DNA of 63,186 nucleotides, the filler included, from Hyphochytrium catenoides (Eukaryota > Protista > Hyphochytriomycota), in assembly GCA_900088475.1 (NCBI GenBank). It is 9 parts of 9 records of this genome, joined end to end, with 100 filler letters (N's around TTAATTAATTAA, not from the genome) between each part and the next. Parts side by side here need not be neighbours in the genome. Positions count along the whole stretch, not along the records: positions 21,698 to 53,074 come from FLMG01000375.1; 8 more parts are not named here. One strand, written 5' to 3'. The position numbers and the translations under genes were made by a program. Shown here in pieces: positions 21,698 through 46,525 of the stretch. The notes below the pieces were generated by a model. It did no database searches. It was not told the origin of the DNA and saw only the letters and a program-made list of their open reading frames with translations. Positions within the stretch are counted from its first letter, which is position 1. Each line of letters begins with the position of its first letter.

Positions 21698-21968
21698 GTT
21701 CAAGCGTTTCCCGATGGAAGCAGTAGGTCCTGGAGTATGGAATAAGAGAGGGGAGGAGAGTAGATGGAAAAAAAGAACTACAGAGCTAGCTAGATAAGCA
21801 AGAGAGAGAAGAAGCGCTGAGAGACGGAAGAGCGCATCTCATGGGAGAAGAGACGAAGCTGACGGGCTGAGGACCGCGCGATGGATAATCAAAGGGAGAG
21901 AGACAAACAAGCAGAGAGAGGCAAACAAGCGAAGTGAATGAAAGCACGATAGCGTGGCTAATTATTAC

Positions 21969-22241
21969 CTTTCCCCAGTATGCATCCATGTCCGCGTCCA
22001 ACTCCTCGGCGGTTCTGGGCTTCTTGTTACCTCCACGGCCACGCCCTCTCCCTCCGCGGCCTCTTCCCCTTCCTCCAGTTCGCCCACCTCCTCCTCTTCC
22101 ACCGCCACCGTTTGATTTGGGACCGCCTCTGCTGCCACCACTACCGCCACCGCCGCCTCGTCCTCCTCTCTTGTTTGGTCTCTGTCCTTCGCTTTGCCCT
22201 CCACTTCTCTGTCGCTTCCCTGCGTTACGGCCGGGTGCCAT
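21969..22241 (-). CDS. RGG-rich protein with a FoP/CHTOP-type C-terminal motif (first exon; downstream exon unresolved)
   Basis: MAPGRNAGKRQR...RGGRGGGG...RGRGGRGRGRGG-NKKPRTAEELDADMDAYWGK followed by a GT donor. 'TAEELDADMDAY' is the FoP-duplication/UAP56-binding motif seen in CHTOP/ALYREF. Confidence 0.75.
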
Positions 22242-23362
22242 CTTGATTTGATTTCTTAGGCTGGGTTTCCTTTCCTGATCGCTGTACTTCTGCTGCTGTT
22301 TCGTAGAGAGAGAGAGAGAGCTTTCAACCTTGGGAATAGCGCTTGGAGTCGAAAGGACAACGGAAGTAGTGATGACAGCTGGACGAAGCTTCACAAAGGA
22401 GGGAAGCTGCGCAGGAGAGGTAAGAGTAGGGAGAGAAAGATAGGTGGGTGCTCATAAAGAGATTTACAAAGAGAGAGAGTGAGAAGAGAGAGACGACAGA
22501 GAGAGAGAGAGAGAGAGAGAAGAGAGAGAGAGAAGAGAGAGAGAGGNNNNNNNNNNNNNNGAAAGGGAAACGCCAAGCCTTCCACAGCCTCCAGTATCTT
22601 TTGAATTTCTCTCCCCCTTCCCACAGCTTTACGGTATCCAGGTCATACCCACCCATGGTAGGAGCTACCCATGGGCCCTGTAAAATGGTTAACTATTGGT
22701 ACTTCTAGGCGACCCAACAGATATTCTGGGTCCACGCCTACTAGTTATCAAGAGTGAAAGCCTGATTGATTCGTCATTGTAGTTCTCTATGTTCTGATGA
22801 TGCAGAACAGAAACTGCACTTGTCATTGGAGCTGAAGCTTCATCAGCATTGCTGCTGACAGACCCACCGCAGACGAAGCTCTTGCGGAGCTAGAGCTCGA
22901 CTACCGGCTCATTATAGCGCAGAGGTGGAGGCGCTGAGATGTCTGCCTGGAGCTGAGGGTGTGGCCATTTTGCATAGGCATAGTCTAGGACTCACACATC
23001 TGAATAGAGCCAGTTATAGGGCCATACAAGGTGCTCTCCTGCTCCTATTATTGCTCATACTCACGGTGTTAGCGCCCCATTGGACCTCAAAATAATTCAC
23101 GGAGCTCTCTTAGCATTTGATCACTCGAAGGGGCCCTCGACGTTCATCTAACGTGTATAGGTACCTAGCTAACTCTATATAGTCATGGACGTGGCAGTGA
23201 TAGGTGAAAGACCCACATGAAGCCGTGCTGGGCTTCAGTTCATCCAGAGCTTCTCAGACCTTGTTAACCCCAGCTTCAACCTGTGACTGCCTCTAGAAGG
23301 AAGCACCTATAGTGCACTAGGAGCTCCTTAAAACATCCCTAGAGACAACCTTGAAAAGAAGC

Positions 23363-25286
23363 ATGAGTACTTTAACCTCTGCTGGCCATCAGGCTGCTGC
23401 AGGTTCCGGCCGCTATCTCATCCAGTTTGCTCAGCGGCACGTAGACTTCCGTATTCCAGAGCTTGAAGCTGTTCTGCAGATGCGCCAGCTCCCCCTGCAG
23501 CAGTGCTTCTCTACTTTACAAGGCGCCGATCTCCGTAAGAATGCTGCAGACTCTCCGTTTCTTGAGATCTGGCTGCCATCAGTAGAGGACGCACAGTACA
23601 TTGGCCGGCGCTGCGTCCTAGCGCGAGGCATCTATCGCGTCTGGAGCCAAGGTAACCTCCAAAGATCGTTAGCTCTGCTGTCAGGTGTCTTTTTGTGGCT
23701 TATGATTTACTTGATATGTTTTTTTTAGGTAAAGATTATCAAGAGGCCCTGGAGAGCATTACAAAACATCTTCCGTCGTCAACTAAGGCGCTTCTCTGCC
23801 GTGAGGATGTTTCTTGGTCCATCCTAGTCTCTGCCTTTGGCAAGTCTTTCTCTCCTGAGGAGCAGGAAACGAAGAGGCATCGTCTCGCTGAGGTGTTGAA
23901 TCCCAGCGGCCCCATTGACATCAAAGCGCCAGATCTCAAGCTCTGGATTTTTGAAGACATTGGACAGTCTCCCGAAGAAAGACAACGGGGATCTGCAAAA
24001 GCCATCTGGTTCGTTCAAGAAATCGGTGGTAGCGGGCGCCACAGAGCTGGACAGACCAGCAGAGATCTAATAGATTTGTTACGTCTCCCACAGCGAAAGT
24101 TCTTGGGTCCAACCTCTATGGATCCCGAGCTGTCGCTAATTATGGCGAACCTTGGTTTGGTCTCCTCTTCCTCCTCTGTCTTAGATCCCTTTGTTGGCAG
24201 CGGAAGCATCCTCGTCGCTTGTGCCGCCTTTGGAGCCTTTTGCAGTGGCGGAGACATAGATATGAGAGTGCTCTTGCCAGGAGGAGAGAGAGGAGGGAGA
24301 AAACGCCACAACGAGAAGGAAGAGAACGGAAAGCTAGCTGTAAAAGCAGAGAAAAGGGAAGGGGAGGAAGCAACAGATAACGGCAATAGAAGAGAGCGAG
24401 TAGGAGAGGTGCAATCACGAAAGAAGGGTGGCGGTAAGAGAAGGATTGAGGGCTCAGAGGGAGAGGACATCTTCTCAAACTTCTCGCAGTATAACTTTCC
24501 TCGCCCAGAGCTCTTCCGATGGGACATATCTAACCCCTGCTGCCGAGCGAGAGAGGAGAGACAAGAGAGAAGCCTTCCGATCTTCGACGCGATAGTATGC
24601 GATCCGCCGTATGGCATTCGAGCAGGGGCCAAACGGATGAGGAAGAGGGAAGAGAAGAACGGAGAAGAGGAGGAAGGAAAGGTGAAAGCTCCTTCTAACA
24701 TCCCTCGAGCTCCTTATGAGGGCGAGGAGGTTATGAACGATCTTCTGGAGCTTGCTTCGCTTCTTCTTAGGGAAGGAGGGCGGCTGGTCTACTGGCTCCC
24801 CGTCGAGAGAGAAAAGTACACAGATGAGAGTGTCCCTTCCCACCCTTCTCTCAGGCTCGTAGCTAACTGGTAAGCTCTAATTTTTTGGACAAAGACTGGT
24901 CATTCTCTCACTCTCTTTCGCCGCTTTTTCTCCCCATTCCTTTCTCTGTTCCTCCTGTCATCAAGGATACAATCCCTGGCTCTTCCCTCAACTGGCCTTT
25001 GTCCTCAGTTTCTCAGTACCTCTGTCCTAGCTGCCACTCTGCCGTCTCCGCTTTTACCCGTCGCCCTTCCTTCTGAACTCCGGTTAGACATTTCGCACTG
25101 TTTTTCCCTCTGCCATCGTCCCGCCTTCCTCCTGTCTTTATCACTTTTTATCCCCTTCGTATTACAATCTGTGGAGAACCAATGCCGGTTGTCAGAGTAG
25201 CTGACATTTCTACTTTCAGTGAACAGATCATGACCTGGAAACTTAGTCGTCGGCTAATTACCATGGAGAAGGTCCAGAAAGCTTGA
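23363..25286 (+). CDS. TRMT11: tRNA (guanine(10)-N2)-methyltransferase (exons 23363-23651, 23729-24869, ~25220-25286)
   Basis: YLIQFAQRHVDFRIPELEA, RKFLGPTSMDPELSLIMANL, VLDPFVGSGSIL, GGDID, FDAIVCDPPYGIRAG, LLREGGRLVYWLP, and last exon EQIMTWKLSRRLITMEK*. Confidence 0.93.
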
Positions 25287-32157: not shown

Positions 32158-34350
32158 CTATGCAGCGTTCGCAACCTCACAGAGTATGGCTAGACGATTG
32201 CTTGCATCGGAGTCAGAGCCATCATCGCCCGCACCCTCCGCTTTCTTTCCTGCTGCTTGTTGTCCTTCAGTGTTACCGCGGCCGTTCTCTCCACTCCTTT
32301 CTCGCCCTTCTCCTCCTCTCAGATTGGCGCCGTGGCTCTTGCAGACACCTCTGCTCTGTACTGACCGCGTACAGCCAGGGACCTTGCATCTCTTTCCTCC
32401 TCCATGGCTTATGCACGCGCCTCCGCTTCTTGCACTCCTTGTGCATCCAGGGGATAGACAGAGCTTCCCCCCGCCATGTGTTCTACAGAGGCCCCCACTT
32501 TGAGCTGAGGAAGAGCAAAGAGGAACAGTGCAGCGGCTTCCTCCTCCATGGGCCCGACAGAGTGCTCGGCTCTGCGCTGAGGAGGTGCAGCCTGGGACTG
32601 AGCAGTTTCGATTGCCTCCGTGTGACTTACAGATGCCTTTGCTTCTTGCCACGTTGGTGCACTTGGGCACGCGGCACTTGGTGGTTCCCTTAGATCCCGT
32701 AGATGAAGACAGAGCTGGCGGAGAAGGGAGAGCAGTAGGGAGGAAGGGAGATGAAGGTTGACCAGTTGATGGGAGAGGGCGCTTCTTCTTTCCTTTCACT
32801 CGCCCTGCATTATTGTCTGTTGCCAGCGAGGAGCCTTGCACTTTCTTATGGAGTGAGACTGACGAGAGCGCAGGAGAGTCCTTGAGTACGGCATTGCTAG
32901 GGATTTCTAACCTAAAGGGAGCAGGCGAAAGCGGTGGCAAAAAGCTGGTAGCGCTCTGGAAGCCACAACTGCCAGGAGCTGGAGCAGCAAATGGAGGAAG
33001 ATTGCTACTACGTGAGAGAAACAACGAGGGCGGACCTCCTGCCTGGAAATGGCCCTGTGCTAGATCCTCCGCAGGTCTTGGTGTTGGCTGGTTATTGACA
33101 GCTGGAGAGTGGGAAGAAGAGGTGCCTGAAAGGGTAGAGAGAGAAAGCGGTGGAAGAGGACTAACTCTTGCCGGAGCGAGGGAGGAAGTGACGAGAAATG
33201 AGCCTACGCCTGTCCCCGCCATGCTCTCCCCTAAACCTTGGAGCGCAGAGAACGATGAAGGAGAGAAGCTGGGAAGTGCTGCTGATGGCTCCTGTTCCTC
33301 CTCCTCCATTGCCCTTGACTTCTCCACCGCCAGTCCTGGTGTTGAGGATAGTGCAGGAGGTGCTGAAAGCTTTCTTGTGGCTGCCAAAGAAGCGGACGAT
33401 AGGCTTCCTCCTCCTCCTGTGCCCTCAGTGCTGTGGGCCCTACATCTGCCTAAACTCTGCGCTACATTTCCGCATGCCTTTTCTACGCAGAGCTTTCCGC
33501 CTCCATGGGCCCGGCAACGTCCGCCGCTAACTACTGAGGAAGAGCAGCCCTGCTCGCGACAGATCTGGCCCCCTCCATGTGTCCGACAGAGGCCCCTGGA
33601 CTGAGCGGAGCGCTGACATCCTGTCATTTTACAACGGCTCCCACCCCCGTGTGAACGACAGAGGCCGCGCGACTGCGCAATGTTGGAACAAAGAGGAGCC
33701 GAGCACTTCTTCCCTCCGCCGTGTGCTGTACAGAGACGCCGAGAACGAGCCATTGAGGTGCAGGAAGCCACATGGCAACGACGGCCGAGGGCATTGCCCG
33801 AATTCGGGCTCTGCAATGGCTGCAGGGAGAAAACGATGGAGCTAGATGACGTCAAGTCCGTTCCTGGGTCAGGGCCAACAGGAGAGGAAGTGCTTGGAGC
33901 AGGTAATGGAGAGAGAGACGGGAACGCAGAAGATGGGTCTTCCTTTTTCACGTAAAGAGAGCCCGAGGTGCGGATGAGATCTGAGAGCTCAGGAAGCTTC
34001 TGCTGCTGCGCAGCTGGCGCAGGGAGAGAAGCCGAACATCGCGACTCGAAGAGGTTTCTCCCCGAAAGAAGAGTAGAAGGACTCCCGGTCTCTCTTTCAC
34101 CTTTTCTACCAAATTTCTCTTCTCTCTTCTGTTCTCCACCTGATCTGCTAGGAGACGGCGGAGGCTCTTCCCTTGGAGAGAGGATGGCAGACAGAGACTG
34201 TCTATGGCTTTGACTTGTTTCATGGTCAATCCGAGGAGAAATGACGGACACCACCGCAGCAAATCTCTGGCTTAGATCTGAAGAATTTCTCCCCAGCGTG
34301 TCAGGCGTAAGGATAGCCGGCTCCCAGGACGGGGCACGCGGGCGAGACAT
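32158..34350 (-). CDS. Intronless WRKY19-like C-x4-C-x9-C-x2-H-GGG zinc-finger repeat protein (2 clusters of 5 fingers)
   Basis: Long ORF (first ATG 34350) with ten repeats such as CSVPGCTSSAQSRALCRAHGGG. No true WRKY domain is present. Confidence 0.88.
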   Translation of the reverse strand: MSRPRAPSWEPAILTPDTLGRNSSDLSQRFAAVVSVISPRIDHETSQSHRQSLSAILSPREEPPPSPSRSGGEQKREEKFGRKGERETGSPSTLLSGRNLFESRCSASLPAPAAQQQKLPELSDLIRTSGSLYVKKEDPSSAFPSLSPLPAPSTSSPVGPDPGTDLTSSSSIVFSLQPLQSPNSGNALGRRCHVASCTSMARSRRLCTAHGGGKKCSAPLCSNIAQSRGLCRSHGGGSRCKMTGCQRSAQSRGLCRTHGGGQICREQGCSSSVVSGGRCRAHGGGKLCVEKACGNVAQSLGRCRAHSTEGTGGGGSLSSASLAATRKLSAPPALSSTPGLAVEKSRAMEEEEQEPSAALPSFSPSSFSALQGLGESMAGTGVGSFLVTSSLAPARVSPLPPLSLSTLSGTSSSHSPAVNNQPTPRPAEDLAQGHFQAGGPPSLFLSRSSNLPPFAAPAPGSCGFQSATSFLPPLSPAPFRLEIPSNAVLKDSPALSSVSLHKKVQGSSLATDNNAGRVKGKKKRPLPSTGQPSSPFLPTALPSPPALSSSTGSKGTTKCRVPKCTNVARSKGICKSHGGNRNCSVPGCTSSAQSRALCRAHGGGSRCTVPLCSSSAQSGGLCRTHGGGKLCLSPGCTRSARSGGACISHGGGKRCKVPGCTRSVQSRGVCKSHGANLRGGEGRERSGENGRGNTEGQQAAGKKAEGAGDDGSDSDASNRLAILCEVANAA

Positions 34351-35278
34351 TTCTGCTGTGTTGTCTCTTGCTTCCAATCCTGCCTACCAAGACTACTAAG
34401 GGAGAGAAGCGATGCTGCTAATCTCGACCTTTTTTGATCTCTCTCTCTCTGCGTTTCTCTTCTTTCTTTCTTATTGCGCCTTTCTATCTCTGGGAGAGAG
34501 ATTCAAAGGACAGCCGCAAGAGAGAGCTCCACTTTTTGCCTGGACCTTTGGTGTCTCTTCACATGAAGATTCTGGTTTTCTCTCTAGTCAATAGTTCGAG
34601 GACTCTTCTCTATCTTTGCTTATGACAGGAAGGCGTGTTCGGAAGGCCGTTGAAAGAAGCGTAAGCATGGGCTTTTGTCCCGTGGTTGTCGCTTCTCTCT
34701 CTTTTCCTCACTGTTTTTCTCTCTCTCTCTCTTTAGCTTCCCTTCACCTGCCGCTAATGGTAAGTGGCGAGTGGTGGATGGAGCGACGAGGAAGAGGAGC
34801 GGCGTGGGCTGCGGAAACGTCCTCAGTGAAGGAGAAGAAATGGCGGGCGCCGCTCGACGGGAGAGGTCATCTTCCCACTTTCCTCCTCCCTCTCCTCTTG
34901 TCTCTCTTCCATGAGTCCTCCGAGGTAGTTCTTTTCCTCTTTGGAGTCACCTGCTTCCTCTCGGCTCTTCTCTCACCTTCCCTGCTCTTGCTCTGTCTTC
35001 TCTCTCCTATCTCACTTCTCTCTCTTCTCTCTCGTCACCCCGTCTCTCCATCAGCCTTTTCCCTCTTCGACACGCTGCTGCAGCTTTTGCTCTTGTGCAT
35101 CGTAACTCAAGGCTCTTCGCGTCAACCACCGGGACAACCTCGCCCTCACCTCATACCTTCCGTCAGGACCGAGCAGGGAAGGGAGAGAGAGAGAGAAACA
35201 TTCCCTCGATAGAACTACCGTTTGTCTCTCTTTATCTCTCTCTTTCTGTCATCCTTTTCCTCTCCTCATGCCTTTCCT

Positions 35279-37539: not shown

Positions 37540-40500
37540 ATGGATCTGAAATTACGGAACAGGAGGAAGGAGACGGAAGAAGAGGAGGGAAGGCCTCCGT
37601 GTCCCTTTCTTTCCTTACAGCGGCCAGGGTCGCATATATCGGTCCAAAGCGCGTTGATTGCCGTGCTGGGAATCCCTCTTCTTGGGGCCCTTATCTTCTG
37701 GATTATCCATGGCGTTAGACCAAGGTAAAAGATACTTTCGCCATTCACCCTCTGGAATTTGATGGTGGCTTAAGCATGATTTAGACTGGACACTTGGTCG
37801 GTACAGGTAGAAGGTTGGCTGCCGTAATAGGCATGCTTCACTGGAAGGCTGCTTCGTGTCTAATTTGCCGCCTTAATCGTTGCCACTTTGACTATCATGA
37901 TTCACTAAATAGCCTCGTTTACCGGCCTCATTTATGTCGGCGTTGTCTTCCTATTGCCTTCAGCTTCCTAGGTGGAGGATTAGCAAGCACCAAGGGAACA
38001 GAACGATGTGGCGTTCCCGTCCTCTCGTCTTTATCTGCAGAGGACTTCTACAGACATTATAGGGGACGGAATCCCTTTCTTCTTCTCAACGTGACGTCAA
38101 GTTGGACAAAGGAAGAGAGGGAATCGTTTGAGATAGAGAGTTTGCAGCGTTATTATGGGCATCTGAGGGTTAAGACTGGTTTCAGTGAGGAGTTTCCTTT
38201 GGGTGCTGGCGACGCTGAGGGTCTAAGATTCGGAAACAAGCAACCGGACAGTGGAGATGAAGCCGCTCTTTCTTACTTCACCCTTCAAGAATATCTCCGT
38301 TATCTAGGTCGGTCTTCGGACTACTCATCGAATTCTGTCCATGTCTGTCTCCCTGCCGCTCCCTCTGGGCCAACCCCACCCTTCCCTTGCTTACTTTGTG
38401 ACCCTCTCGCATTAATTGGCCCTCTTTCTTGTCTACATCTGTGTTCGCTTTATCCTGATCGCCAACGGTTCTCCAGGCTTGTCAGAAACAGCTCCTTTGT
38501 CTTATCGGAGGTATTTGAGCCTCACGAGTTCCCTTGTCGGACGAAGAGTTTAAGAGTTGGATCTCTTAAGTCTTACACACCTAGAGACTGATTCAGTCCT
38601 GCTCCTCGATCACAGACAATTCGTCGCTTCTGTCATTATCGCCCGGAAACCAGCTTTACCTCTTTGACTCCGGCTCGATGATGGCCCAAGCCCCGCGTCT
38701 GAGGCGTTCTATTCACCTTCCCGCAGCTTTGAAAGCTCTAGATGAAGACGGGGATATGAAGCTGTTCTTCGCGGTGGGGGCAGAAGGGTCTGGGGTTCAT
38801 TTCCATCGACACAGAGAAGGTAAGGCGCAGTATCATGGTCACTTTGCCACGACAGGTGTCTATCTGGAAAGATGGGATGACCCTCCCTTTAGTCTGTTCC
38901 GTAACTCTCTCAGAAAGAGGAGGAGTAAAGCATGCTAGGGCTTTAGCCATGCCTAATCCAGCCCCTCCGCTTATCTCTACACCTACCTTAGCCTACAACC
39001 TAGTAATACATGGCCAAAAGCGGTGGTTTCTCTATCCTCCGCACAGTCTTCCGCCCTTTGACTTCATGAGTGAGGTGGCGCTGAGTAGCTGGCTTGAGCA
39101 GCGGCTACCTTTGGTTGAGGAAGGCCGAGTGGCAGAAACAGAAGGTGGCAAGGCGCAAAGAGGAGCAAGGAAGCATGACAGTACAGAAGCGCATCCTATC
39201 CAATGTGTGCAGCGGGAGGGAGAGCTTCTCTATGTACCAGACTGTAAGTGCATGTCTCATGGATTCTCCAAGCAACCAGTCTGCTCCAATGTAGCGCAGT
39301 TATATTCCTTCTATGTTTGCTCTCACCGTCACATGCTTGAGAAATCACTGAAAGGCGGTAGCTTTTCCTCCTTACATCTCTGCTCCTCTTCCGTTCTTTT
39401 GCTCCGTCTTCACAATCTCCCCAACGTTGCGAGAGTGCTTCGGAAGCCAACAGCTATTCTTCGCCCTAAACCGACTTAACACCCTCTTCATGTTACTACA
39501 TTCTTTATTTTATCCTCGACTTTCTAGCCTGGTACCACGCAGTACTCAACGAAAGAGAGACAGTGGCAGTCTCTGGCCAGCGTCATGTCTCCTTTTCTCC
39601 CCTCAGCAAGGAATGGGATGAGGTTTCCTCACAGTTCAAAAATAGAGGCGAGTGGACTCCGGAGACGAGAGTTTCGGTCAGTTCAGCTTTGATTATGCCT
39701 ACATTCTACCATTTTCGTTAGAGAGCTGTTTCCCACCTGAGCCCATAGTGCTGTCCTGCCTTCTTCTTGCCCTTGTCTGCGAACATTATGGCATGGTCTT
39801 TTCAGGAGATAGACTGTTCCTCGCTCCCCTACCTTCACCTTCACCAAGAAGGGCTATTTTGGGAGGATGAAGACCCCTTGATCTTTCGGTCTCTTTCTTC
39901 TAAATTTTCGTCGTCATCGACTCTCACGCGGGCGACTCATGTCCCTGCGTTTACCAGTCCTTGGAGCGCTTCCTGCGGCATGAGCCTCAGTGGGAGCAAG
40001 CGCTATTATGGCGGGCTGAAACTTACCTCGAGCTCGGTAACTTCCAGAGATGCATCAAGGTTCCTACTTCTTTCTGACACCAGCAAGATTCCCAAATATC
40101 TTCGTTCCCTGTCGACTTCACGTCTCTGTTTCGTCCTGCCTTTCTGAGATTGAGCTAGGGACCTCCTTGTGAAAACTCACTAAGCCTTCGTGGTCACTTG
40201 ATCGTTGGTTACTAATCGGTCTAGCAGTGTGTCCACTTATCCATGCTTATCTCTTCCCTATCCATCATTTACTCTTCACATCCAGGCGACAGAGCAGCTT
40301 CTAGCACGCAACTCTTTAATAAGTGCTGCCTGGGCGCTTAGAGGTTGGTGCTTACTGGAGGAGGACGAGGTAATGGGCCGAGCAGGTAGAAGCACGCAAG
40401 CAATAGAAGGTGCTGCGGAGAGCTTCAAGAAAGCACTGGACTTACATAGCAAGAGCGAGGACGCCGTCTTAGGTCTCGTTGAGCTGGAAGAGAGATACGG

Positions 40501-40636
40501 AGAGAGAAGGAGCAGCACTGAAGCCGCGGATAGATGGAAGAAGCTGCTGTCTCTGATACAACTTGAGAAGAGGAATCATTGGGCTGAGTTGGCTGCCCTT
40601 CGGAAGAAGATCTTAGCGTCTGTTAGAGGAGAATAG
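37540..40636 (+). CDS. JMJD8-like JmjC/cupin protein with N-terminal TM anchor and C-terminal TPR-like helices (paralog A)
   Basis: TM segment SALIAVLGIPLLGALIFWII; LSAEDFYRHYRGRNPFLL; GAEGSGVHFHRHREAYNLVIHGQKRWFLYPP; CVQREGELLYVPDSWYHAVLN; TPR-like ALLWRAETYLELGNFQRCIK and AAESFKKALDLHSKSEDAVLGL. Confidence 0.85.
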
Positions 40637-41016
40637 CGGGCTCTTTGCTGTTCGAGGCTTGCCGGCGTCGGCTGGCGATCTGCTCCATACACTCCACTTG
40701 GACTGTGCTAGCAAGGGTGATTCAGTAGAAAGGATCTCCCAGCAAACCGTGTGGCATGCGCACTTGCTTCTCTTCTGTTCCTTACGTGGAGCTGCGTGTT
40801 ACCTCTCAACAGCGGGACATCATAGACACCTGGGCTTGTGCTTTCTGTCGGTTTCCACTGGGTCTAGAAGAGCGAGATCCGAGCCTCTTCCTTACTGTCG
40901 TGAGACAATGTTGGTGACTAACTATTTGTACATATTTATTTACCAGGAGGTCTCATTTAGCCTTTGCCATCATGACGCGAAGCCTTTCTGAGTATTACTC
41001 TCTCTCTCTTCCTCTC

Positions 41017-44000
41017 CTAGCGCTTTGCTTCTTGAACCGCATCAGTGCTGGTTCCTTCGGCGGTGGGCTCCAGTGCAGCAGCTGCTGCTTTCTGTTGTTG
41101 CTCCCATTCCTCTATCCTTCTCCTCTCTACCTCCTCTCTTGGGTTGATCTCAGCGAAGCCAGGGGGTCGCTTCATCACGAGTCTCTCATATATCTCGTCT
41201 TGAATCTCCCTCAAGTCTTGGAGGTGACTATCCGCCTTGCGCCACTGCTCCCAGCTCTTTTCTCTCTCCCTCTCTGCGCCCTCATGGTCTCCTCTCCTCT
41301 CCAAGAGGGTAGCAAGAGAGTTCAGGGCGAAAGAATCGCTAGTGTCCAGTGTACGAGCGAAGGAAAGGGCTTCTATCCCGTGATCGATGTGACCCAAGTC
41401 TCCTAGACAATGGCCAAAGGATGCCCAGTTGCTAGCGATCCAGCGGTCGGCTTCCAGGGCGGCGGACGCCACCTACATCCAAAAAGAAACCAATGAGGAC
41501 AGAGAGGGGTCACTAAGAAGTCTATTGCTAAAACGAGATGCGGCGCGCTAGCTAGCACCTCCACTGCGAGGAGCAAGGTTCAAGCGATAGCTTCGACTAG
41601 AAGGGTGCAGACAGTGGCAAGTGGATTTCATGACCTAGCGCTTGGGACGGAAGGAGAATCTACTGAGACCGAAGGACATGGAGCTGCCCTAGATTGGGAA
41701 ACAGGTAAGAAGAAAAGGTAGCTATAGCTGTCTGCTGCTTACCCTCATGCATTCGTCTGTCTCTCCAGCCAGCCTTAGAACTCTGATGAGCTCCGTCTTA
41801 CAGGTGAGACAGTGATGGGTCATGGAATCCAGCTTGTAAAGCTCCCACGCGGCTTCTCGATACGCTTGTCTTTTCCTCTCTTCGTACTCAACTTCACTCT
41901 CCCCTTCTCTTTCTTTGTTGCCCTCTTCCTCAATCGCAGACGCCCGTGCCAAAGCCTGTCCATAGGCGGTCTGGGGATGGTGGATCTGCGAAGCGATGGC
42001 TGTCGTATCTTCTAAGTTCAAGACAGCGTGATACCAGCCTGTAAGGAGTAACGAAGAGATGTGATCAGAATGGGAACACAGAGGTATGGCAGTCACATCA
42101 GAGACAAGGCAACAGGGAAGGGTCTAGGGCATCAGAGCTTGAACGGGGTAATTCCAAGCCACAAAGAAGTATGATGAAGAGGGGAGAAAGGAGGAGACAA
42201 TCATTAAAGGCAAGGGACTTGGTAAGACTAAAAAAATCACGACTCAGGATCCTTACTCTCTGGAACGTAGAAGAGCTCTCCCTCCTCCTGGACGCACTGC
42301 ATGGGCCTTCTCTCCAGCGGAAGGAGAGGGAGAAGGTGATCAATCCAGTACGTGAGAGGAAGGTGAGAGGTGAAGTCGAAGGGAGGCCACTCGCCCGCCG
42401 GGTAGAGTAGCCAGCGCTTTCTTCCCTTGATAATGACGTTCATCGCTGCAACCAGGAATAGGAAGAACCGAACAAGAAGGTGACCAACGTAAGACTAGAA
42501 ACGTAAGGGCGGCCTGTCTACTTGAAAGGGAGAACAGAGAGGAAAAAATGAACTCGGAGGAAAGAGAGCTCTTCAATAACAGAGAGGCAGAAAGAAGGAT
42601 AGAGAAGCGCCAAGAAGACGATGCAACCACCAGTACAGCCTCTTAAGCCACTTTTCCCTATGAAGGGCTCCTGCTTCCCTCCCTAGTCATCGTGGCACCT
42701 CGCTCTCCTCATCATTCTCTCTTGCTACCCTCCATTGTCATCGCTCACCGTCATTGTGCTTGTGGAACTGGACGCCCGTAAGCCCGGCTCCTACTCCGAG
42801 GAAGGAATAGATCCGCTGCACGTCGAAGTGGTGCAGAGCAGGAGGAGGTATAATCTCAGCGCGAAGGTCCTAATAAGGCCCAAAGCAAGGGAGGAGGAGC
42901 AGGCGAGGGATAAGACTTTAGCGCCGTGAGAGGACAAGAAAACATGGTTCCCCAGCATCTTTTGAAGGAAGGCTAGCTTCAGACAGACGCCCAGCTCTGT
43001 TCATTAATGCTCTTTCTTTGCTCTGTTCCTTTCTCTTTTGCCTTTGTGTCGTCATCACTTACCGTGGCGTAGTTAAAGAAGTCTCCTCTTTCGAAGAGAT
43101 ACATAGGTTCCTCCGTCTTCCGTCTCAACTGCCAGACCGAAGAGCAGGGTGTGATAAGGAGACGTTAGACATCAATAGCGCCAACTGAACAACTAGAAAA
43201 GGGAGAGACATAGGTCTCGGGGTAGAGCAGCAGCAAAAAGCATCTTTGCGAAAGCAGACACCATCAAGACGGCGGTCACTGTCGTGCATGGAGACATCAG
43301 ATCGACCTACTGACTCCTCTCTGTCCGAGAGGGACTAGGAAGAATGACCATGGAAAACAGAAATGCTCAGAGAAGCAGAGAAGCCGCGGAAGATACTGAG
43401 AGGGAGATGAGAACCGAGAGAGGGTGAGCGAAGACCGAGAGACGATGGTGGCGGAGGACAGCGAAGAAAACGAAGGTGCAATAATAGAGAAAGAATGATG
43501 CTGGATCCGACTCACCTCCTCGTCCTTCATATAATTGAAATAGTCCCGCACGGTCAGCTTCTCATAGCCCACGCCGCCAGCCAAAGGGAAGAAGGAGGAG
43601 AAGCTTGTCTTTATCAGGACATTGCCATACTTTTCCACCAACTCTTCCTCTTCAAAGGCACCTCTTCTCCAATCCTTGGTCGCGTTAGTGAGGATCAGCG
43701 GCTTATGGCCCTTGAACTCTCTCTCAAACTCTTCCACGGAGATCCAAGAGCGCCGCTCAACGTCGCACCAGGAAATGTCATAGTTGTCTCTTCTTTTCTG
43801 GGCGTGCTCTCCTCCTGCTCTCGCTCGGGAACTTTCAGTTCCCTCTTCTTCTTGCCCTCCTCTCTGCCACTTACTCTCTGCCCTCTCATGCCGCCGAAAC
43901 TCCTCCTTCGGTGGCGGCCGAGCGTAGTTCTGAGTCTTCTCCTCGGTGTCGTCGGTAGTGGCGAGAGAAGGACTCAAGGATGAGCGAGAGTTGAGCGTCT

Positions 44001-45148
44001 CATTGTCCGTCTCATCTTCTGTTATGTCCGTCAAACAAGAGAGAGAGGACGACGAGCTGTCTGAGGCATCGCAAATAGAGGGAAAAGCCTCGAAGAAGTC
44101 GCTCCGATTATCTTCTTCCAAGAGCCTCCTGGACTGGGTGACCGACGCGAGCGTGGACTCAACAGTTCTTAGCCTGTATAGTAGCAGAAGAGTCAGCGGC
44201 GTATGAGAAGCGGCGGGCAACAAAGCCATGGACACTGAAGAGAAACCCAGATTAAGAAGAGAGAGAGTATGAGAGAGAGAGGGAGAGCATAAGAGAGGGA
44301 GAGAGAGCATGAGAGAGGAAGAGAGAATGATAAGGAGGGAGGGACAAAAAGAAGAGAGAAGAGAGAACCCGCATGTGGACGCTTCAGGGGCGGCAAGGAT
44401 AGGAGTAGTTGGACGTTGTGTGGAAAGAGGGTCCATTCTGGAGCAGATTGAGTCCTGGACATAGCGTTTACCTGCCATAGAGCACCAGGGAAATAGTGGT
44501 GGTGAAGATGAGGGACGCAATCAGCCACTTCTTGCCCGTGTCGCCAGGCTTGACTGGCTGGTCTCTCTCCTCGAAGGCTTCCTGGCAACCTTTCTCTTCT
44601 CCTCGACTCTGCTGATCCTTTGCCCCTTTCTCTTCTTTCTTCAATTTCTTTTTCTCCTCGCCCTCCTTCTGTTGGTCCCGGATGGCCTTCCGTGGCGTCG
44701 CTCTCCCGTTGGCGCCACTCATGATGATGATTCCCTTCTCCTCCTCCGTCTTGTCCTCTAATGGACAAGGGGAGCCCTCTAATGGTGAAGTGGCAAGGTC
44801 CACCGACTGCTGCCGCCAAATGGGAATCTTATCTGGATAATAAGCTTCGGAAAAGGTGCCAACAACAGATGCGGAAGAGAGGCTTTCTCTTTCTTCCTTT
44901 GAATAACTCCTCCCCAAGCGCGAGGCTCTGCGTCCTCGTCTTTTCGCGTTGAAGAAGAGTGCGGCGGTAGTCAAATCTGTTAGTGGTGAGGAGAAGAGGA
45001 GGGGCAAGAATGCAGAGTGGCAAGATCCTTTCCTCCAGACGCTGCTTTGGTGGTCGTCTTCTGCAGCATGGACAGTGCTGCTTTCTCGTTGCCTTTCTCC
45101 TTCTGTCGTTCCCTCTTCTCTTGCTCTCTTGGCCCCAATCAGTAGCAT
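41017..45148 (-). CDS. JMJD8-like JmjC/cupin protein with TM anchor and C-terminal TPR-like helices (paralog B; start at ATG 45148 or 44722)
   Basis: TM segment WLIASLIFTTTISLVLYG; ISVEEFEREFKGHKPLILTNATKDW; GAGLTGVQFHKHNDAMNVIIKGRKRWLLYP; CVQEEGELFYVPESWYHAVLNL; TPR-like NWASFGHCLGDLGHIDHGIEALSFARTLD. Confidence 0.85.
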
Positions 45149-46525
45149 GCTTGCAATGCTCCTCCTCCCTTCACTTCCGCTAACTTTGGCTCCTCTCTCT
45201 TGCTGATGTCTCTCTCTTGCTGTGTCTCTCTTTCTGTGTCTTACTTTTTCTTTTCCTTTCTCTTTCCCTCCCTCTCTCCCCTCTGCTCCCTCACACGCCC
45301 CTCTCTCTCTCCCTCTCTCTCTCTNNNNNNNNNNNNNNNNNNNNNNNNNNNNNNNNNNNNNNNNCTCTCTCTCTTTCTCTCTCTCACATGCCTGTCAGTG
45401 GATAGCGTGGATTCTGATTCTGACAATTCGGCCGGTGAAGGATTGGATTTTACGATTAACCTAGAAGCCAAGATCTATGGGAGGGAGGAGTATCTACAGG
45501 TACAGGAAAGCTAAGAATCTTAGTCCTCCGTCCCCCCTGCGCCGCCGCTAGTGTTAAAGGGAAGACTGGCCTGGCTATGCAATTCTCTTACTACTGCAGC
45601 CTCCTCTACTGTCAACACCTAGTATTCTCTTTCCACAAGGGGCATATTACTACCTGAAAGGGGGCCAGACACAAGGTTCGGACCAAAAAGTTTCGGAAGA
45701 TTTTTGCTGCTGATGCAGCTGCTCTGCTCTCTCTCTCTCCTTTCCTTTGGATGCTGTCTCTCGGTCTTGAAGCTGCGCTCACTCTTTTCTCCTCTCTCTC
45801 TCTCTCTCTTCTTTCTCTCTTCCACTTGCCTCTCTTCGTTTCTAGTCCCTTATCGCGCTCTTCTTGACTGCTGCAGCCAGAGGACACTCAGCTAGTCATC
45901 ATAAGACGTTTCCATTAGTTCTCTCGGTCTTTGGCCATCGAAAGGCCGTCAATCTTCAACGATCCTTCTTGGCCTGTCTGCCTTCGGTTCGATAAAACGG
46001 AAGAAGAAGAGCGGCTCACTCTGAAGCAGGAAGTGATGCTACTGTTTGTCTACCGCTGAACCAAAAAGGAGGAAAGAAGCGCAATCTGATATAGCAAGGA
46101 GCGCGATTAACGTTAGAGAGAATAGCCTTATAGCGAGTGGTTGAGATTAAAGGAGTTTATAAGCAGCAGCTGCTGATAGTTCTATAGCCAACTCAGGAGT
46201 CTACTACTTAGCTCAGGAGCACATCGCGGTTGTCTAGCCTCAAATCTCCTCTAACGGACTCTTGTCACACAGGACCTCGAGTCCCTGTCAGCACTTACGA
46301 CTCTATGGCGTGTCAGCAGAGAAGTACTAGCTGGGCTTCTCTTGGAGGGGCGCTCCAGATGTGGGATTGTAGCTAAGCTGGAGGCTGATAGCTGGCGTCG
46401 GGAGAGTGCGGCGTAGAGATCAGCCATATAATCCTGGAAAGGTCCTTTCCTTCGATCTGCTTTAAGCGGGAGCGTAGATAGATCTCATTAACTTGGTGCC
46501 TTCTCCTTCTTCAGAGATAATGCAT

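What the first reader, a model, noticed from the sequence alone, without database searches (positions are those of the whole stretch)
37540..45148. Convergent pair of membrane-anchored JmjC(HxH)-TPR paralogs
Seen: two tail-to-tail genes with stops ~380 bp apart share the architecture N-terminal TM, JmjC, TPR-like helices. Both have H-x-H...H metal ligands (FHRH / FHKH plus WYHAVLN) instead of the usual H-x-D/E...H. They share three same-phase introns: after HxH, after YVP[DE], and RCIK|A versus ECMR|V. Established: HxH plus an N-terminal hydrophobic segment is characteristic of JMJD8, a poorly characterised ER-luminal JmjC protein; I do not know it to carry TPRs. Inference: an old inverted duplication of a type II membrane, secretory-pathway 2OG-oxygenase-like enzyme with a TPR substrate-recognition module, perhaps acting as a heterodimer. 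This is the best candidate for an undescribed system in the window.
Basis: partly seen in the sequence, partly recalled or inferred. Interest (0 to 1): 0.72.

Follow-up and report, generated by a model that had tools for sequence, protein, structure and literature searches.

The report
Paired membrane-anchored JMJD8-like oxygenase–TPR genes
Two tail-to-tail neighbouring genes are sister copies of a membrane-anchored, JMJD8-type oxygenase-like protein with a three-histidine metal site fused to a TPR protein-binding module. The same design occurs, unstudied, in many other eukaryotes.

Summary
Gene A (+, 37540-40636, 7 exons, about 510 aa) and gene B (-, 45148-41017, 7 exons, about 820 aa) close their frames with GT-AG introns. 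Their stop codons lie 380 bp apart.

- **Shared design:** each has an N-terminal hydrophobic anchor, a JmjC/Cupin_8 core and C-terminal TPR-like helices. The core carries H-x-H...H, the 2OG-binding Lys, HxxxN and two family-conserved cysteines.
- **Paralogy:** A and B are 39-53% identical exon by exon and are sisters in two independent exon trees. They share three intron positions and phases.
- **Relatives:** their proteins have no close relative among 1.84 billion representatives. About 60 distant relatives exist, from dinoflagellates, a flatworm, bivalves and marine protists. All 30 aligned have H-x-H. Many have a signal peptide or anchor plus strong Pfam TPRs, and none carries a functional name.
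- **Closest known:** a model of the best full-length proxy matches chordate JMJD8 (TM 0.82). JMJD6 is the closest solved structure.
- **TPR fold:** B's last exon folds as a TPR (Z 13.7, rmsd 1.2 Å).

Most likely these are type II, lumen-facing Fe/2OG oxygenases whose TPR docks protein substrates, as in AspH. Topology, activity and a heterodimer are untested.

The parts
37540..40636 (+). Gene A, 7 exons (37540-37724, 37964-38307, 38616-38819, 38992-39243, 39528-39622, 39958-40059, 40286-40636), about 510 aa
   Evidence: GT-AG model with closed frame. Exons 2-5 are hit by homologues in tblastn. The E2/E3 and E5/E6 junctions have alternatives.
37651..37707 (+). Gene A hydrophobic signal-anchor core (ALIAVLGIPLLGALIFWII)
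   Evidence: Kyte-Doolittle 2.66 over 19 aa. It is followed directly by a phase-2 intron.
37964..39622 (+). Gene A JmjC/Cupin_8 domain (exons 2-5). It holds the conserved Cys (CGVPV), the NVT sequon, H-x-H at 38804-38812, Lys at 39018-39020, the second Cys (IQCVQ), His at 39536-39538 and the Asn of HxxxN at 39548-39550.
   Evidence: Cupin_8 E 4.8e-4 on exon 4 alone. Alignment to the family. All catalytic and Cys columns are present.
39958..40636 (+). Gene A TPR-like region (exon 6 plus exon 7) and stop codon
   Evidence: Exon 6: ANAPC3 0.003, TPR_2 0.019. Exon 7: TPR_CcmH_CycH 5.2e-5, TPR_19 0.006. hhalign to the family TPR profile gives E 0.019. It is 31-35% identical to B's exon 7. All scores are below Pfam gathering scores, and exon 7 was not folded.
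40637..41016 (.). 380-bp spacer between the two convergent stop codons; presumably holds both 3' UTRs
   Evidence: Coordinates. No Rfam match. No transcript data.
41017..45148 (-). Gene B, 7 exons (45148-44472, 44173-43516, 43128-43063, 42869-42749, 42445-42257, 42038-41743, 41472-41017), about 820 aa (about 678 aa if it starts at the ATG at 44722)
   Evidence: GT-AG model with closed frame. Exons 2-6 are hit by homologues. The frame is open upstream of 45148 into an N gap.
44474..44527 (-). Gene B hydrophobic segment (WLIASLIFTTTISLVLYG), flanked by KK and RLR
   Evidence: 18 hydrophobic residues. It is below the 19-aa Kyte-Doolittle threshold of 1.6; my hand Kyte-Doolittle sum over 18 aa is about 1.7. 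It is followed directly by a phase-2 intron.
43801..44172 (-). Gene B acidic, Ser-rich linker ('stem') between the anchor and the JmjC domain, with NRS and NET sequons
   Evidence: Translation; sequons. No homology.
41938..43800 (-). Gene B JmjC/Cupin_8 domain (end of exon 2 to start of exon 6). It holds the conserved Cys (CDVER), the NAT sequon, H-x-H at 42756-42764, Lys at 42417-42419, the second Cys (MQCVQ), His at 42028-42030 and HxxxN.
   Evidence: tblastn: P0011 E 7e-16 (exon 2), P0084 E 3e-18 (exon 5). Catalytic and Cys columns are present.
41239..41859 (-). Gene B TPR region (C-terminal part of exon 6 plus the first ~80 aa of exon 7); the rest of exon 7 is a charged helical tail
   Evidence: AF2 model of exon 7: pLDDT 81.7. 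VIA-align: Sgt2 TPR Z 13.7, rmsd 1.2 Å over 75 aa, and every listed match is a TPR-type helical repeat. Foldseek: all 50 listed hits are TPR or TPR-derived designed repeat proteins. hhalign gives E 7e-4.

Best explanation
A and B are sister genes made by an old inverted tandem duplication. Each encodes a single-pass protein with four parts: a short N-terminal tail, a signal-anchor helix, a JMJD8-family JmjC double-stranded beta-helix domain, and three to four C-terminal TPR repeats.

**Shown by sequence**
- The metal site is H-x-H...H, not H-x-D/E...H.
- The Lys that aligns with the 2OG-binding Lys of JMJD6, the strand-3 Asn and the HxxxN motif are all kept.

**Inferred**
- The anchor puts the JmjC-TPR part in the lumen of the ER or Golgi (type II topology).
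- There the protein acts as an Fe(II)/2-oxoglutarate-dependent oxygenase, more likely a hydroxylase than a demethylase, on secretory or membrane proteins.
- The TPR solenoid holds the substrate polypeptide against the active site. This is what the TPR domain of the ER enzyme AspH does.
- The two copies have probably diverged in substrate range or sub-compartment. B has gained a long N-terminal tail and an acidic stem.

The same design is conserved across distant eukaryotes, so this is one lineage's duplicated copy of an unnamed, uncharacterised branch of the JMJD8 family.
For: **Gene models and paralogy**
- Searches give the models, the exon-by-exon identities and the residual DNA match.
- A and B are sisters in the exon-2 tree (96/92*) and in the exon-4/5 tree (95/63).

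**Family**
- 61 representatives at E<=1e-3, nearly all with H-x-H.
- Of 26 long relatives, 26 have Cupin_8 and 14 have TPR_2.
- Hydrophobic N-terminus, then Cupin_8, then C-terminal TPR is seen in P0011, P0012 (Macrostomum), P0037 (Mytilus), P0053 (Sinanodonta) and P0006, P0016, P0049. P0014 and P0030 have Cupin_8-TPR but no hydrophobic N-terminal segment above the scan threshold.
- Noctiluca P0084 has the tail, anchor and JmjC, then a C-terminal helical region that is only weakly TPR-like.

**Conserved residues in the family alignment**
- His1 30/30, His2 30/30, Lys 31/31, His3 30/31, Asn 27/31, Cys 24/24 and 29/31. All are present in A and B.

**Fold and closest known**
- The H-x-H aligns to H187-x-D189 of JMJD6. 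The family profile matches JMJD6 at E 4e-36.
- The P0011 model has pLDDT 87.4: a TM helix, the beta-helix core and 8 helices.
- Its best shape match is the chordate 'jmjC domain-containing protein 8' cluster, TM 0.82, rmsd 2.4 Å.
- Profile comparison to the putative JMJD8-type clade gives E 8e-44. That clade shares the Cys-x-I-E-R motif and a signal peptide.
- B's TPR fold.

**Lumen-facing orientation**
- Relatives carry cleavable-looking signal peptides (P0001, P0006, P0016, P0026, P0049).
- Others have strongly basic N-tails before the anchor (P0011, P0084).
- The N-x-T sequon is shared by A, B and P0011.
- A's post-anchor part has an even count of four Cys, and both pairs align with B.

**Literature**
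- JMJD8 is ER-luminal, keeps an uncleaved signal anchor and has His in place of Asp (PMC5684140).
- The JMJD8 family is defined by HxH (PMC2938197).
- In-vitro 2OG turnover by JMJD8 is lost in the H179A/H181A mutant (PMC9820096).
- The AspH TPR is required for substrate hydroxylation, and other ER 2OG oxygenases carry TPRs (PMC6817910).
Against: - Several splice junctions and B's start are uncertain.
- The spliced proteins were never searched or folded as wholes, so domain packing in A and B themselves is unknown.
- Charge around the anchors of A and B is nearly neutral, so the positive-inside rule does not fix the topology. B's hydrophobic segment is marginal.
- TPR evidence for A is weak: every score is below Pfam's gathering scores, and hhalign gives E 0.019.
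- A review of 2OG oxygenases calls JMJD8's catalytic function undefined (PMC10083964), and some predict no activity because of HxH (PMC9820096).
- In the exon-4/5 tree the putative JMJD8-type clade is separate (99/96), and the TPR family sits in an unresolved set that also holds JMJD6-like HxD proteins.
- The identity of that clade as true JMJD8 orthologues rests on my memory of the human motif. It was not confirmed by a tool.
Confidence: 0.6

Rival explanations
1. Pseudo-enzymes. The JmjC fold is kept as a metal-binding or purely structural module without 2OG-dependent catalysis. The proteins then work as membrane-tethered TPR scaffolds or chaperone-like adaptors.
For: H-x-H replaces the canonical H-x-D/E. 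JMJD8's catalytic function is called undefined (PMC10083964), and some predict no activity because of HxH (PMC9820096). TPRs are generic protein-binding modules.
Against: The three His, the Lys aligned with the 2OG-binding Lys and the HxxxN Asn are invariant or nearly so in about 30 distant relatives and in both A and B, which points to selection on an intact cofactor site. In-vitro succinate formation by JMJD8, lost in the H179A/H181A mutant, has been reported (PMC9820096).
Confidence: 0.2
2. Cytosol-facing anchor. The N-terminal helix is a signal anchor for another membrane, such as the mitochondrial or plastid outer membrane or the ER with N-out orientation. The JmjC-TPR part then faces the cytosol, as the TPRs of Tom20 and Tom70 do.
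For: B's segment is short, moderately hydrophobic and flanked by basic residues on both sides. Net charge around both anchors is near zero. My own knowledge: this is the usual look of outer-membrane signal anchors.
Against: Several relatives start with classic cleavable-looking signal peptides rather than anchors. Two cysteines are conserved family-wide, and an N-x-T sequon is shared. JMJD8 is experimentally ER-luminal and N-glycosylated (PMC5684140).
Confidence: 0.15
3. One reading: A and B work as an obligate heterodimer, and the tail-to-tail linkage is kept for co-regulation.
For: JMJD8 forms dimers or oligomers (PMC5684140). The two genes are adjacent, and both keep intact active sites.
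Against: Nothing tested here bears on it. No multimer model of spliced proteins was possible, and there are no expression data. Relatives were recovered as single transcripts or genes with no sign of a conserved pair. Convergent genes do not share a promoter.
Confidence: 0.12
4. One of the two copies is a decaying duplicate, or my gene model joins non-exonic ORF pieces.
For: No transcript support. A carries a 21-aa insertion in the core exon, weak donors (gtcggt, gtttcc, gttcct) and weak TPR scores.
Against: Both models have seven in-frame exons with no stop. All catalytic and Cys positions are kept. Homologue support reaches each JmjC exon.
Confidence: 0.05

Closest known systems
JMJD8 (vertebrate JmjC domain-containing protein 8; JMJD8 family of Iyer et al. 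2010)
   Same: H-x-H...H metal motif with HxxxN, and an N-terminal signal or anchor sequence. The putative JMJD8-type clade of relatives shares the Cys-x-[IV]-[DE]-R motif before the domain and the LEC cysteine. The JmjC domain of the family proxy P0011 superposes best on the chordate JMJD8 cluster (TM 0.82, rmsd 2.4 Å). JMJD8 is ER-luminal with His in place of Asp (PMC5684140, PMC2938197).
   Different: JMJD8 is a JmjC-only protein of about 260-330 aa, whereas A and B add three to four C-terminal TPRs and B adds a long tail and stem. In the short exon tree the putative JMJD8-type clade (HxHGPGFSE motif) is separate (99/96). PMC2938197 lists the family for animals, chlorophytes and stramenopiles and mentions no TPR fusion.
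JMJD6 (lysyl hydroxylase / arginine demethylase)
   Same: It is the closest solved structure by sequence profile (E 4e-36) and by Foldseek (E 9e-15). It belongs to the same higher clade in PMC2938197, with the strand-3 Asn and HxxxN.
   Different: JMJD6 has H-x-D and no signal sequence or TPR. It lacks the second conserved Cys (PLEILQ versus PLECIQ). It is not listed as secreted or luminal in PMC2938197.
AspH (aspartate/asparagine beta-hydroxylase) and other ER 2OG oxygenases with TPRs (C-P4H, P3H1/leprecans, PLODs)
   Same: The working logic is the same: a membrane-anchored or ER-luminal 2OG oxygenase joined to a TPR domain that binds the protein substrate. AspH also has an unusual metal site with only two protein ligands (PMC6817910, PMC11381544).
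   Different: These are a different oxygenase superfamily (classical 2OG-Fe(II) fold, not JmjC). Their TPR lies N-terminal to the catalytic domain; here it is C-terminal. There is no sequence relationship, so this is an analogy, not membership.
UTX/UTY (KDM6A/C)
   Same: TPR repeats and a JmjC domain in one polypeptide (PMC2938197).
   Different: They are nuclear histone demethylases with N-terminal TPRs, H-x-E and a C-terminal zinc domain, and they have no membrane anchor.

Membership tests
JmjC / Cupin_8 superfamily | Double-stranded beta-helix with a significant Pfam Cupin_8/JmjC match | tested here: inconclusive
   Single exons score below the gathering score (A exon 4: Cupin_8 E 4.8e-4, 20.6 bits against 27.4). 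The joined proteins were not scanned, by rule. All 26 long relatives match Cupin_8, best E 5.6e-20. The exons of A and B align over the whole domain.
JmjC / Cupin_8 superfamily | Metal-binding triad plus a 2OG-binding basic residue | tested here: met
   H-x-H, the distal His and the Lys of G-x-K-R-W are present in A and B and in 30/30, 30/31 and 31/31 relatives. H-x-H aligns to H187-x-D189 of JMJD6. The link from that Lys to JMJD6's 2OG-binding Lys rests on my own knowledge of JMJD6.
JMJD8 family (sensu Iyer et al. 2010, PMC2938197) | H-x-H instead of H-x-D in strand 2, within the JMJD6/demethylase clade (strand-3 Asn, HxxxN in strand 7) | tested here: met
   FHRH / FHKH, A[YM]N and H-A-V-L-N in both genes.
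JMJD8 family | N-terminal signal peptide or uncleaved signal anchor giving ER-luminal location (PMC5684140) | tested here: inconclusive
   A has a strong hydrophobic segment (Kyte-Doolittle 2.66) and B a marginal one. Relatives have signal peptides or anchors. Location and topology cannot be shown by sequence.
JMJD8 family | JmjC-only architecture (PMC5684140, PMC9820096) | tested here: not met
   There is a C-terminal TPR region in A and B and strong TPRs in relatives.
JMJD8 family | Orthology to vertebrate JMJD8 in a rooted phylogeny | tested here: inconclusive
   The exon-4/5 tree separates the putative JMJD8-type clade (99/96) from the set that holds A and B. The shape search and profile comparison favour JMJD8, but JMJD6-like profiles score almost as well (E 1e-40). 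No named JMJD8, JMJD5 or JMJD7 reference sequences were at hand for rooting.
TPR repeat proteins | Tandem helix-turn-helix repeats of about 34 aa forming a solenoid | tested here: met
   This holds for gene B. The exon 7 model has pLDDT 81.7, with helices at 2-25, 29-42, 47-60 and 63-100. Every listed VIA-align match is a TPR-type helical repeat (Z up to 13.7, rmsd about 1 Å), as are all 50 listed Foldseek hits. Gene A has only sub-threshold HMM hits and paralogy to B.
AspH-type ER oxygenase-TPR enzymes | Classical 2OG-Fe(II) oxygenase (AspH) domain with an N-terminal TPR | tested here: not met
   The catalytic domain is JmjC/Cupin_8, not AspH-type, and the TPR is C-terminal. This is a resemblance in working logic only (PMC6817910).

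The most novel reading that the evidence does not exclude
The anchor-JmjC(H-x-H)-TPR proteins are the full-length, ancestral form of the orphan enzyme JMJD8, and the short vertebrate JMJD8 is a TPR-less derivative. They would form a eukaryote-wide class of lumen-facing, three-histidine Fe/2OG protein hydroxylases whose substrates are chosen by the C-terminal TPR. In this genome the duplicated pair would have split the substrate range, or would work as a heteromer.
Probability: 0.25. Interest if true: 0.7.

Novelty: new variant of a known kind. Interest (0 to 1): 0.5.

Why it matters
JMJD8 is one of the last human JmjC proteins without an agreed activity or substrate. Its H-x-H metal site has led some to doubt that it is an enzyme.

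This work points to a conserved branch of the same family, found from protists to flatworms and bivalves. It keeps every cofactor-binding residue and adds a TPR module. That argues for a real, substrate-directed activity in the secretory pathway.

It also gives a practical handle. TPR-dependent pull-downs in a tractable organism could find the substrates. The parallel with AspH, P3H and C-P4H suggests that an ER oxygenase joined to a TPR has arisen in two unrelated oxygenase superfamilies.

For this genome, the result annotates two otherwise anonymous genes and dates them as an old local inverted duplication.

Tried and rejected
- **Word-index protein searches.**
  - B exon 2 region: nothing.
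  - A exon 4 region: one truncated relative, P0001.
  - Profile of family plus exons: swamped by generic TPR proteins, with only five new JmjC relatives.
- **PDB with one exon.** No hit. Only profiles or whole relatives reached JMJD6.
- **Protein atlas.**
  - Exon 4 gave only generic JmjC/Cupin_8 clusters.
  - P0047 gave giant-virus and nematode cupin clusters, not a named JMJD8. The JMJD8 identity of that clade therefore stays unconfirmed by tools.
- **Cluster look-ups.** They returned only 'hypothetical', 'uncharacterized' or 'JmjC domain-containing' names.
- **Fragment alignment.** MAFFT misplaced the window's TPR exons in A3, so I left them out of later profiles.
- **Organism.**
  - The nearest relatives disagree: Noctiluca for exon 4/5, a Ploeotia EukProt entry and unnamed transcripts for exon 2.
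  - No Rfam match in the piece.
  - The runs that carry P0011 are not cited in any searchable paper.
  - I leave the organism open.
- **Third copy.** None in the piece.
- **Left out by rule.** The spliced (joined) proteins of A and B were not built, searched, folded or put in a tree. All searches and trees used single exons by reference.
- **Rejected readings.**
  - Membership of the AspH family: different fold.
  - UTX-like demethylase: different clade and domain order, and nuclear.

Full report
I therefore had no transcript data and cannot name the organism. I did not build, search, fold or put into a tree the joined proteins of A and B. Tool translations show M for a GTG or TTG first codon of a reference; this is cosmetic.

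**1. What is in the sequence.** The piece has about 50% G+C and is rich in CT low-complexity tracts. Coding sequence is broken into short ORFs, as expected for a eukaryote with introns.

I built two gene models using only GT-AG introns. Both close their frames.
- **Gene A (+):** seven exons from the ATG at 37540 to the TAG at 40634-40636, 1533 nt, 510 aa.
- **Gene B (-):** seven exons from the ATG at 45148 to the TAG at 41019-41017, 2463 nt, 820 aa.

Both genes encode ...G-V-x-F-H-[RK]-H..., then A-[YM]-N-x-x-I-x-G-x-K-R-W-x-L-Y-P, then [IM]-Q-C-V-Q-x-E-G-E-L-x-Y-V-P-[DE]-S-W-Y-H-A-V-L-N.

- one base into the third codon after the second His (phase 1 in both);
- after YVP[DE] (phase 1 in both);
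- RCIK|A versus ECMR|V (phase 0 in both).

The only substantial DNA similarity left between the genes is a 54-nt inverted match of 76%. It ends exactly at the second junction and includes GTAAG.

Both genes also have a phase-2 intron right after the hydrophobic segment. B has one extra intron (after ...FFNYAT). A probably has one extra (after ...KEWDE).

Weak points are these:
- A's E2/E3 junction has an alternative pair (38342|38597).
- A's E5 donor could be 39623, 39671 or 39677.
- B's frame stays open upstream of 45148 into an N gap, and there is an internal ATG at 44722.

**2. Are the two genes paralogues?** Yes.
- Exon-by-exon BLASTP gives 41% identity (E 5e-15) for the N-terminal JmjC exon and 40% (E 3e-06) for the H-x-H exon. 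The core exon is 53% identical in MAFFT. The last exon gives 31% (E 0.001).
- In a tree of the exon-2 region (95 columns, 24 rows) A and B are sisters with support 96/92.
- In a tree of the exon-4/5 region (65 columns, 50 rows) they are again sisters, with support 95/63.
- No third copy lies in the piece.

The duplication is therefore specific to this lineage relative to all sampled relatives. It is also old, because protein identity is no higher than about 50% and DNA similarity is almost gone.

**3. Relatives elsewhere.** A profile of the core exon was searched against 1.84 billion representatives. It found only 61 proteins at E<=1e-3, the best at 49.5 bits. Neither these proteins nor close orthologues are in that library.

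Nearly all hits carry H-x-H, G-x-K-R-W and W-x-H-A-T-x-N. Of 26 long hits, all match Cupin_8 and 14 match TPR_2, with E values down to 1e-13 to 1e-16 for TPR families.

The order hydrophobic N-terminus, then Cupin_8, then C-terminal TPR is seen in:
- P0011 (transcript contigs from two runs);
- P0012 (Macrostomum lignano), P0037 (Mytilus californianus) and P0053 (Sinanodonta woodiana);
- P0006, P0016 and P0049 (marine and Tara material).

P0014 and P0030 have Cupin_8 followed by TPR, but no hydrophobic N-terminal segment above the scan threshold.

The dinoflagellate proteins P0084 (Noctiluca, 506 aa) and P0028 (Yihiella) have the anchor or signal and the JmjC domain, followed by a more divergent helical tail.

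No source gives any of them a functional name; the names are 'hypothetical', 'uncharacterized' or 'JmjC domain-containing protein'.

tblastn of these proteins against the locus lights up the exons of both genes and nothing else in the piece.

**4. Conserved residues.** Counts are from a 37-row alignment that includes the window's exons as separate rows.

| Position | Conserved in family | In A and B |
|---|---|---|
| First His | 30/30 | yes |
| Second His (H-x-H) | 30/30 | yes |
| Strand-3 Asn | 29/30 | yes |
| Lys of G-x-K-R-W | 31/31 | yes |
| Distal His | 30/31 | yes |
| Asn of HxxxN | 27/31 | yes |
| Cys just before the domain (C-x-[IV]-x-R) | 24/24 | yes |
| Cys in P-L-E-C | 29/31 | yes |

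- The second His aligns with Asp189 of JMJD6.
- A, B and P0011 share an N-x-T sequon at one column.
- A's post-anchor part has exactly four cysteines. The second pair (RCIK / GWCLL) aligns with ECMR / GHCLG in B.

**5. Which JmjC family?**
- Among solved structures, JMJD6 is closest by profile (E 4e-36) and by Foldseek on a model (E 9e-15). JMJD5 is next.
- I modelled P0011, the best full-length proxy. It is 36-45% identical to B's exons and 29-37% to A's.
- The model has pLDDT 87.4 and pTM 0.83. It shows a TM helix at 23-46, the beta-helix core, and eight helices from 310 to 452.
- In the ESM-atlas shape search, its best match is the chordate cluster named 'jmjC domain-containing protein 8' (TM 0.82 by that row, rmsd 2.4 Å over 238 residues).
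- Iyer et al. define the JMJD8 family by 'HxH instead of HxD in strand 2'. They place it with JMJD6 in the clade marked by the strand-3 Asn and HxxxN (PMC2938197). A and B meet all of these.
- Yeo et al. showed that human JMJD8 is ER-luminal, N-glycosylated, keeps its signal sequence as a likely anchor, has His in place of Asp, and oligomerises (PMC5684140).

A group of short relatives (HxHGPGFSE motif; P0047, P0052, P0015 and others) looks like animal JMJD8 from my memory of the human sequence.
- It shares the signal peptide, the C-N-I-E-R motif and the LEC cysteine with the TPR branch.
- Its profile matches the TPR branch at E 8e-44. A JMJD6-like H-x-D group matches at E 1e-40. The two outer groups match each other only at E 1e-27.
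- In the short exon tree this group is a separate clade (99/96).

I therefore file A and B in the JMJD8 family in the broad sense, as a distinct TPR-bearing branch. I do not call them orthologues of vertebrate JMJD8.

**6. Are the C-terminal helices TPRs?**
- **Gene B: yes.**
  - The last exon, modelled with A's as the only other row, reached pLDDT 81.7. It has hairpin helices at 2-25, 29-42, 47-60 and 63-100.
  - All 50 Foldseek PDB hits are TPR or TPR-derived designed repeat proteins, with rmsd 0.6-1.0 Å over about 64 columns and modest E values of 2e-3 to 2e-2.
  - The Foldseek-independent aligner gave the Sgt2 TPR at Z 13.7, rmsd 1.2 Å over 75 residues. PP5, OGT and Sti1 followed.
  - Caveat from the tool's own notes: Z values near 13 can occur for helical repeats in general. 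Here every listed match is a TPR-type helical repeat and the rmsd is about 1 Å.
  - hhalign to the family's TPR profile gave E 7e-4.
- **Gene A: indirect evidence only.**
  - Sub-threshold Pfam hits: TPR_CcmH_CycH 5.2e-5, TPR_19 0.006, ANAPC3 0.003, TPR_2 0.019.
  - hhalign gives E 0.019.
  - It is 31-35% identical to B's TPR exon, including the aligned W, G, C, A, F and L positions.

**7. How it most likely works.**

Shown: two intact paralogous genes, an N-terminal hydrophobic segment, a JMJD8-family JmjC core with a complete H-x-H...H/Lys/Asn set, and a C-terminal TPR.

Inferred: the segment acts as a type II signal anchor, so the JmjC-TPR part faces the ER or Golgi lumen. The grounds are these:
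- several relatives have ordinary signal peptides at the same place;
- P0011 and P0084 have strongly basic tails before the anchor;
- the conserved cysteines and the shared sequon fit an oxidising, glycosylating compartment;
- JMJD8 itself is luminal.

B's 130-aa acidic, Ser-rich stretch between anchor and domain looks like the stem of a Golgi type II enzyme. This is my own reading.

The enzyme would bind Fe(II) through three His and use 2OG. The TPR would hold a protein substrate. This is proven for AspH, where the isolated oxygenase domain turns over 2OG but hydroxylates nothing without its TPR, and it is proposed for C-P4H, leprecans and PLODs (PMC6817910, PMC11381544).

The order of domains differs: the TPR is C-terminal here and N-terminal there. 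The catalytic folds are unrelated, so this would be convergence in design.

Whether H-x-H supports 2OG catalysis is still debated. One paper reports succinate and formaldehyde formation by JMJD8 that is lost in the H179A/H181A mutant (PMC9820096). A review calls the function undefined (PMC10083964).

**8. Rivals.**
- **Pseudo-enzyme or scaffold (0.2).** This fits the doubts about JMJD8. It does not fit the invariance of all cofactor residues.
- **Cytosol-facing anchor in another membrane (0.15).** This fits B's short, basic-flanked segment and the neutral charge balance. It does not fit the signal peptides and cysteines of relatives.
- **Obligate heterodimer (0.12).** Untested.
- **Decaying copy or wrong model (0.05).** Unlikely, given intact frames and residues.

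**9. Novelty and verdict.**
- a TPR fold is predicted;
- the two proteins are sisters;
- I found no paper that describes an anchor-JmjC(H-x-H)-TPR family.

Iyer et al. list JMJD8 without any fusion, and only for animals, chlorophytes and stramenopiles.

The design is not unique to this genome. It sits unnamed in databases for several phyla. I rate it a new variant of a known kind: a TPR-bearing, membrane-anchored branch of the JMJD8 family, here as a duplicated pair.

Interest is moderate, 0.5. It would not astonish a 2OG-oxygenase specialist. It does give a concrete route to the long-open question of what JMJD8-type enzymes do.

Noticed in passing
window 32158-34377 (-): A single 739-aa ORF with nine WRKY19-type zinc-finger repeats (C-x-x-x-G-C-...-HGGG; Pfam Zf_WRKY19, E 7e-64). 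The repeats are embedded in Ser/Pro/Ala-rich low-complexity sequence.
   Followed up: partly
window 23695-24873 (+): A 392-aa ORF with an RMKL-like/UPF0020 methyltransferase domain (E 1e-10) and a DPPYG motif. It looks like a large exon of a TRMT11-type tRNA guanine methyltransferase. That name comes from my own knowledge and was not tested.
   Followed up: partly
window 21786-22394 (-): A Gly/Arg-rich ORF that matches the FoP_duplication domain (E 2.4e-9). It is probably a CHTOP / Aly-REF-like RNA-export adaptor exon.
   Followed up: no
window about 45320-45365: A run of N (assembly gap) lies about 170 bp upstream of gene B's putative ATG. B's reading frame stays open from 45148 up into the gap, so B's true 5' end may be missing or longer.
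   Followed up: partly
P0047 and its clade (relatives, not in the window): The short H-x-H-G-P-G-F-S-E proteins that look like animal JMJD8 have their nearest protein-atlas clusters in giant viruses (Nucleocytoviricota, scores 0.95-0.96) and in nematodes. JMJD8-like cupins may be common in giant viruses.
   Followed up: no
window 40050-40059 / 40349-40351 (A) and 41743-41755 / 41407-41409 (B): A second pair of cysteines (RCIK ... GWCLL in A; ECMR ... GHCLG in B) is aligned between the two paralogues inside the TPR region. The members of each pair are about 25 residues apart across the shared phase-0 intron. They could form a disulfide between neighbouring helices; I could not check this without model coordinates.
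   Followed up: partly
window 39114-39176 (+): Gene A carries a 21-aa charged insertion (EEGRVAETEGGKAQRGARKHD...) in the loop before P-I-Q-C-V-Q. B and the nearest relatives lack it, though some other relatives (for example P0012) have insertions in the same loop.
   Followed up: no
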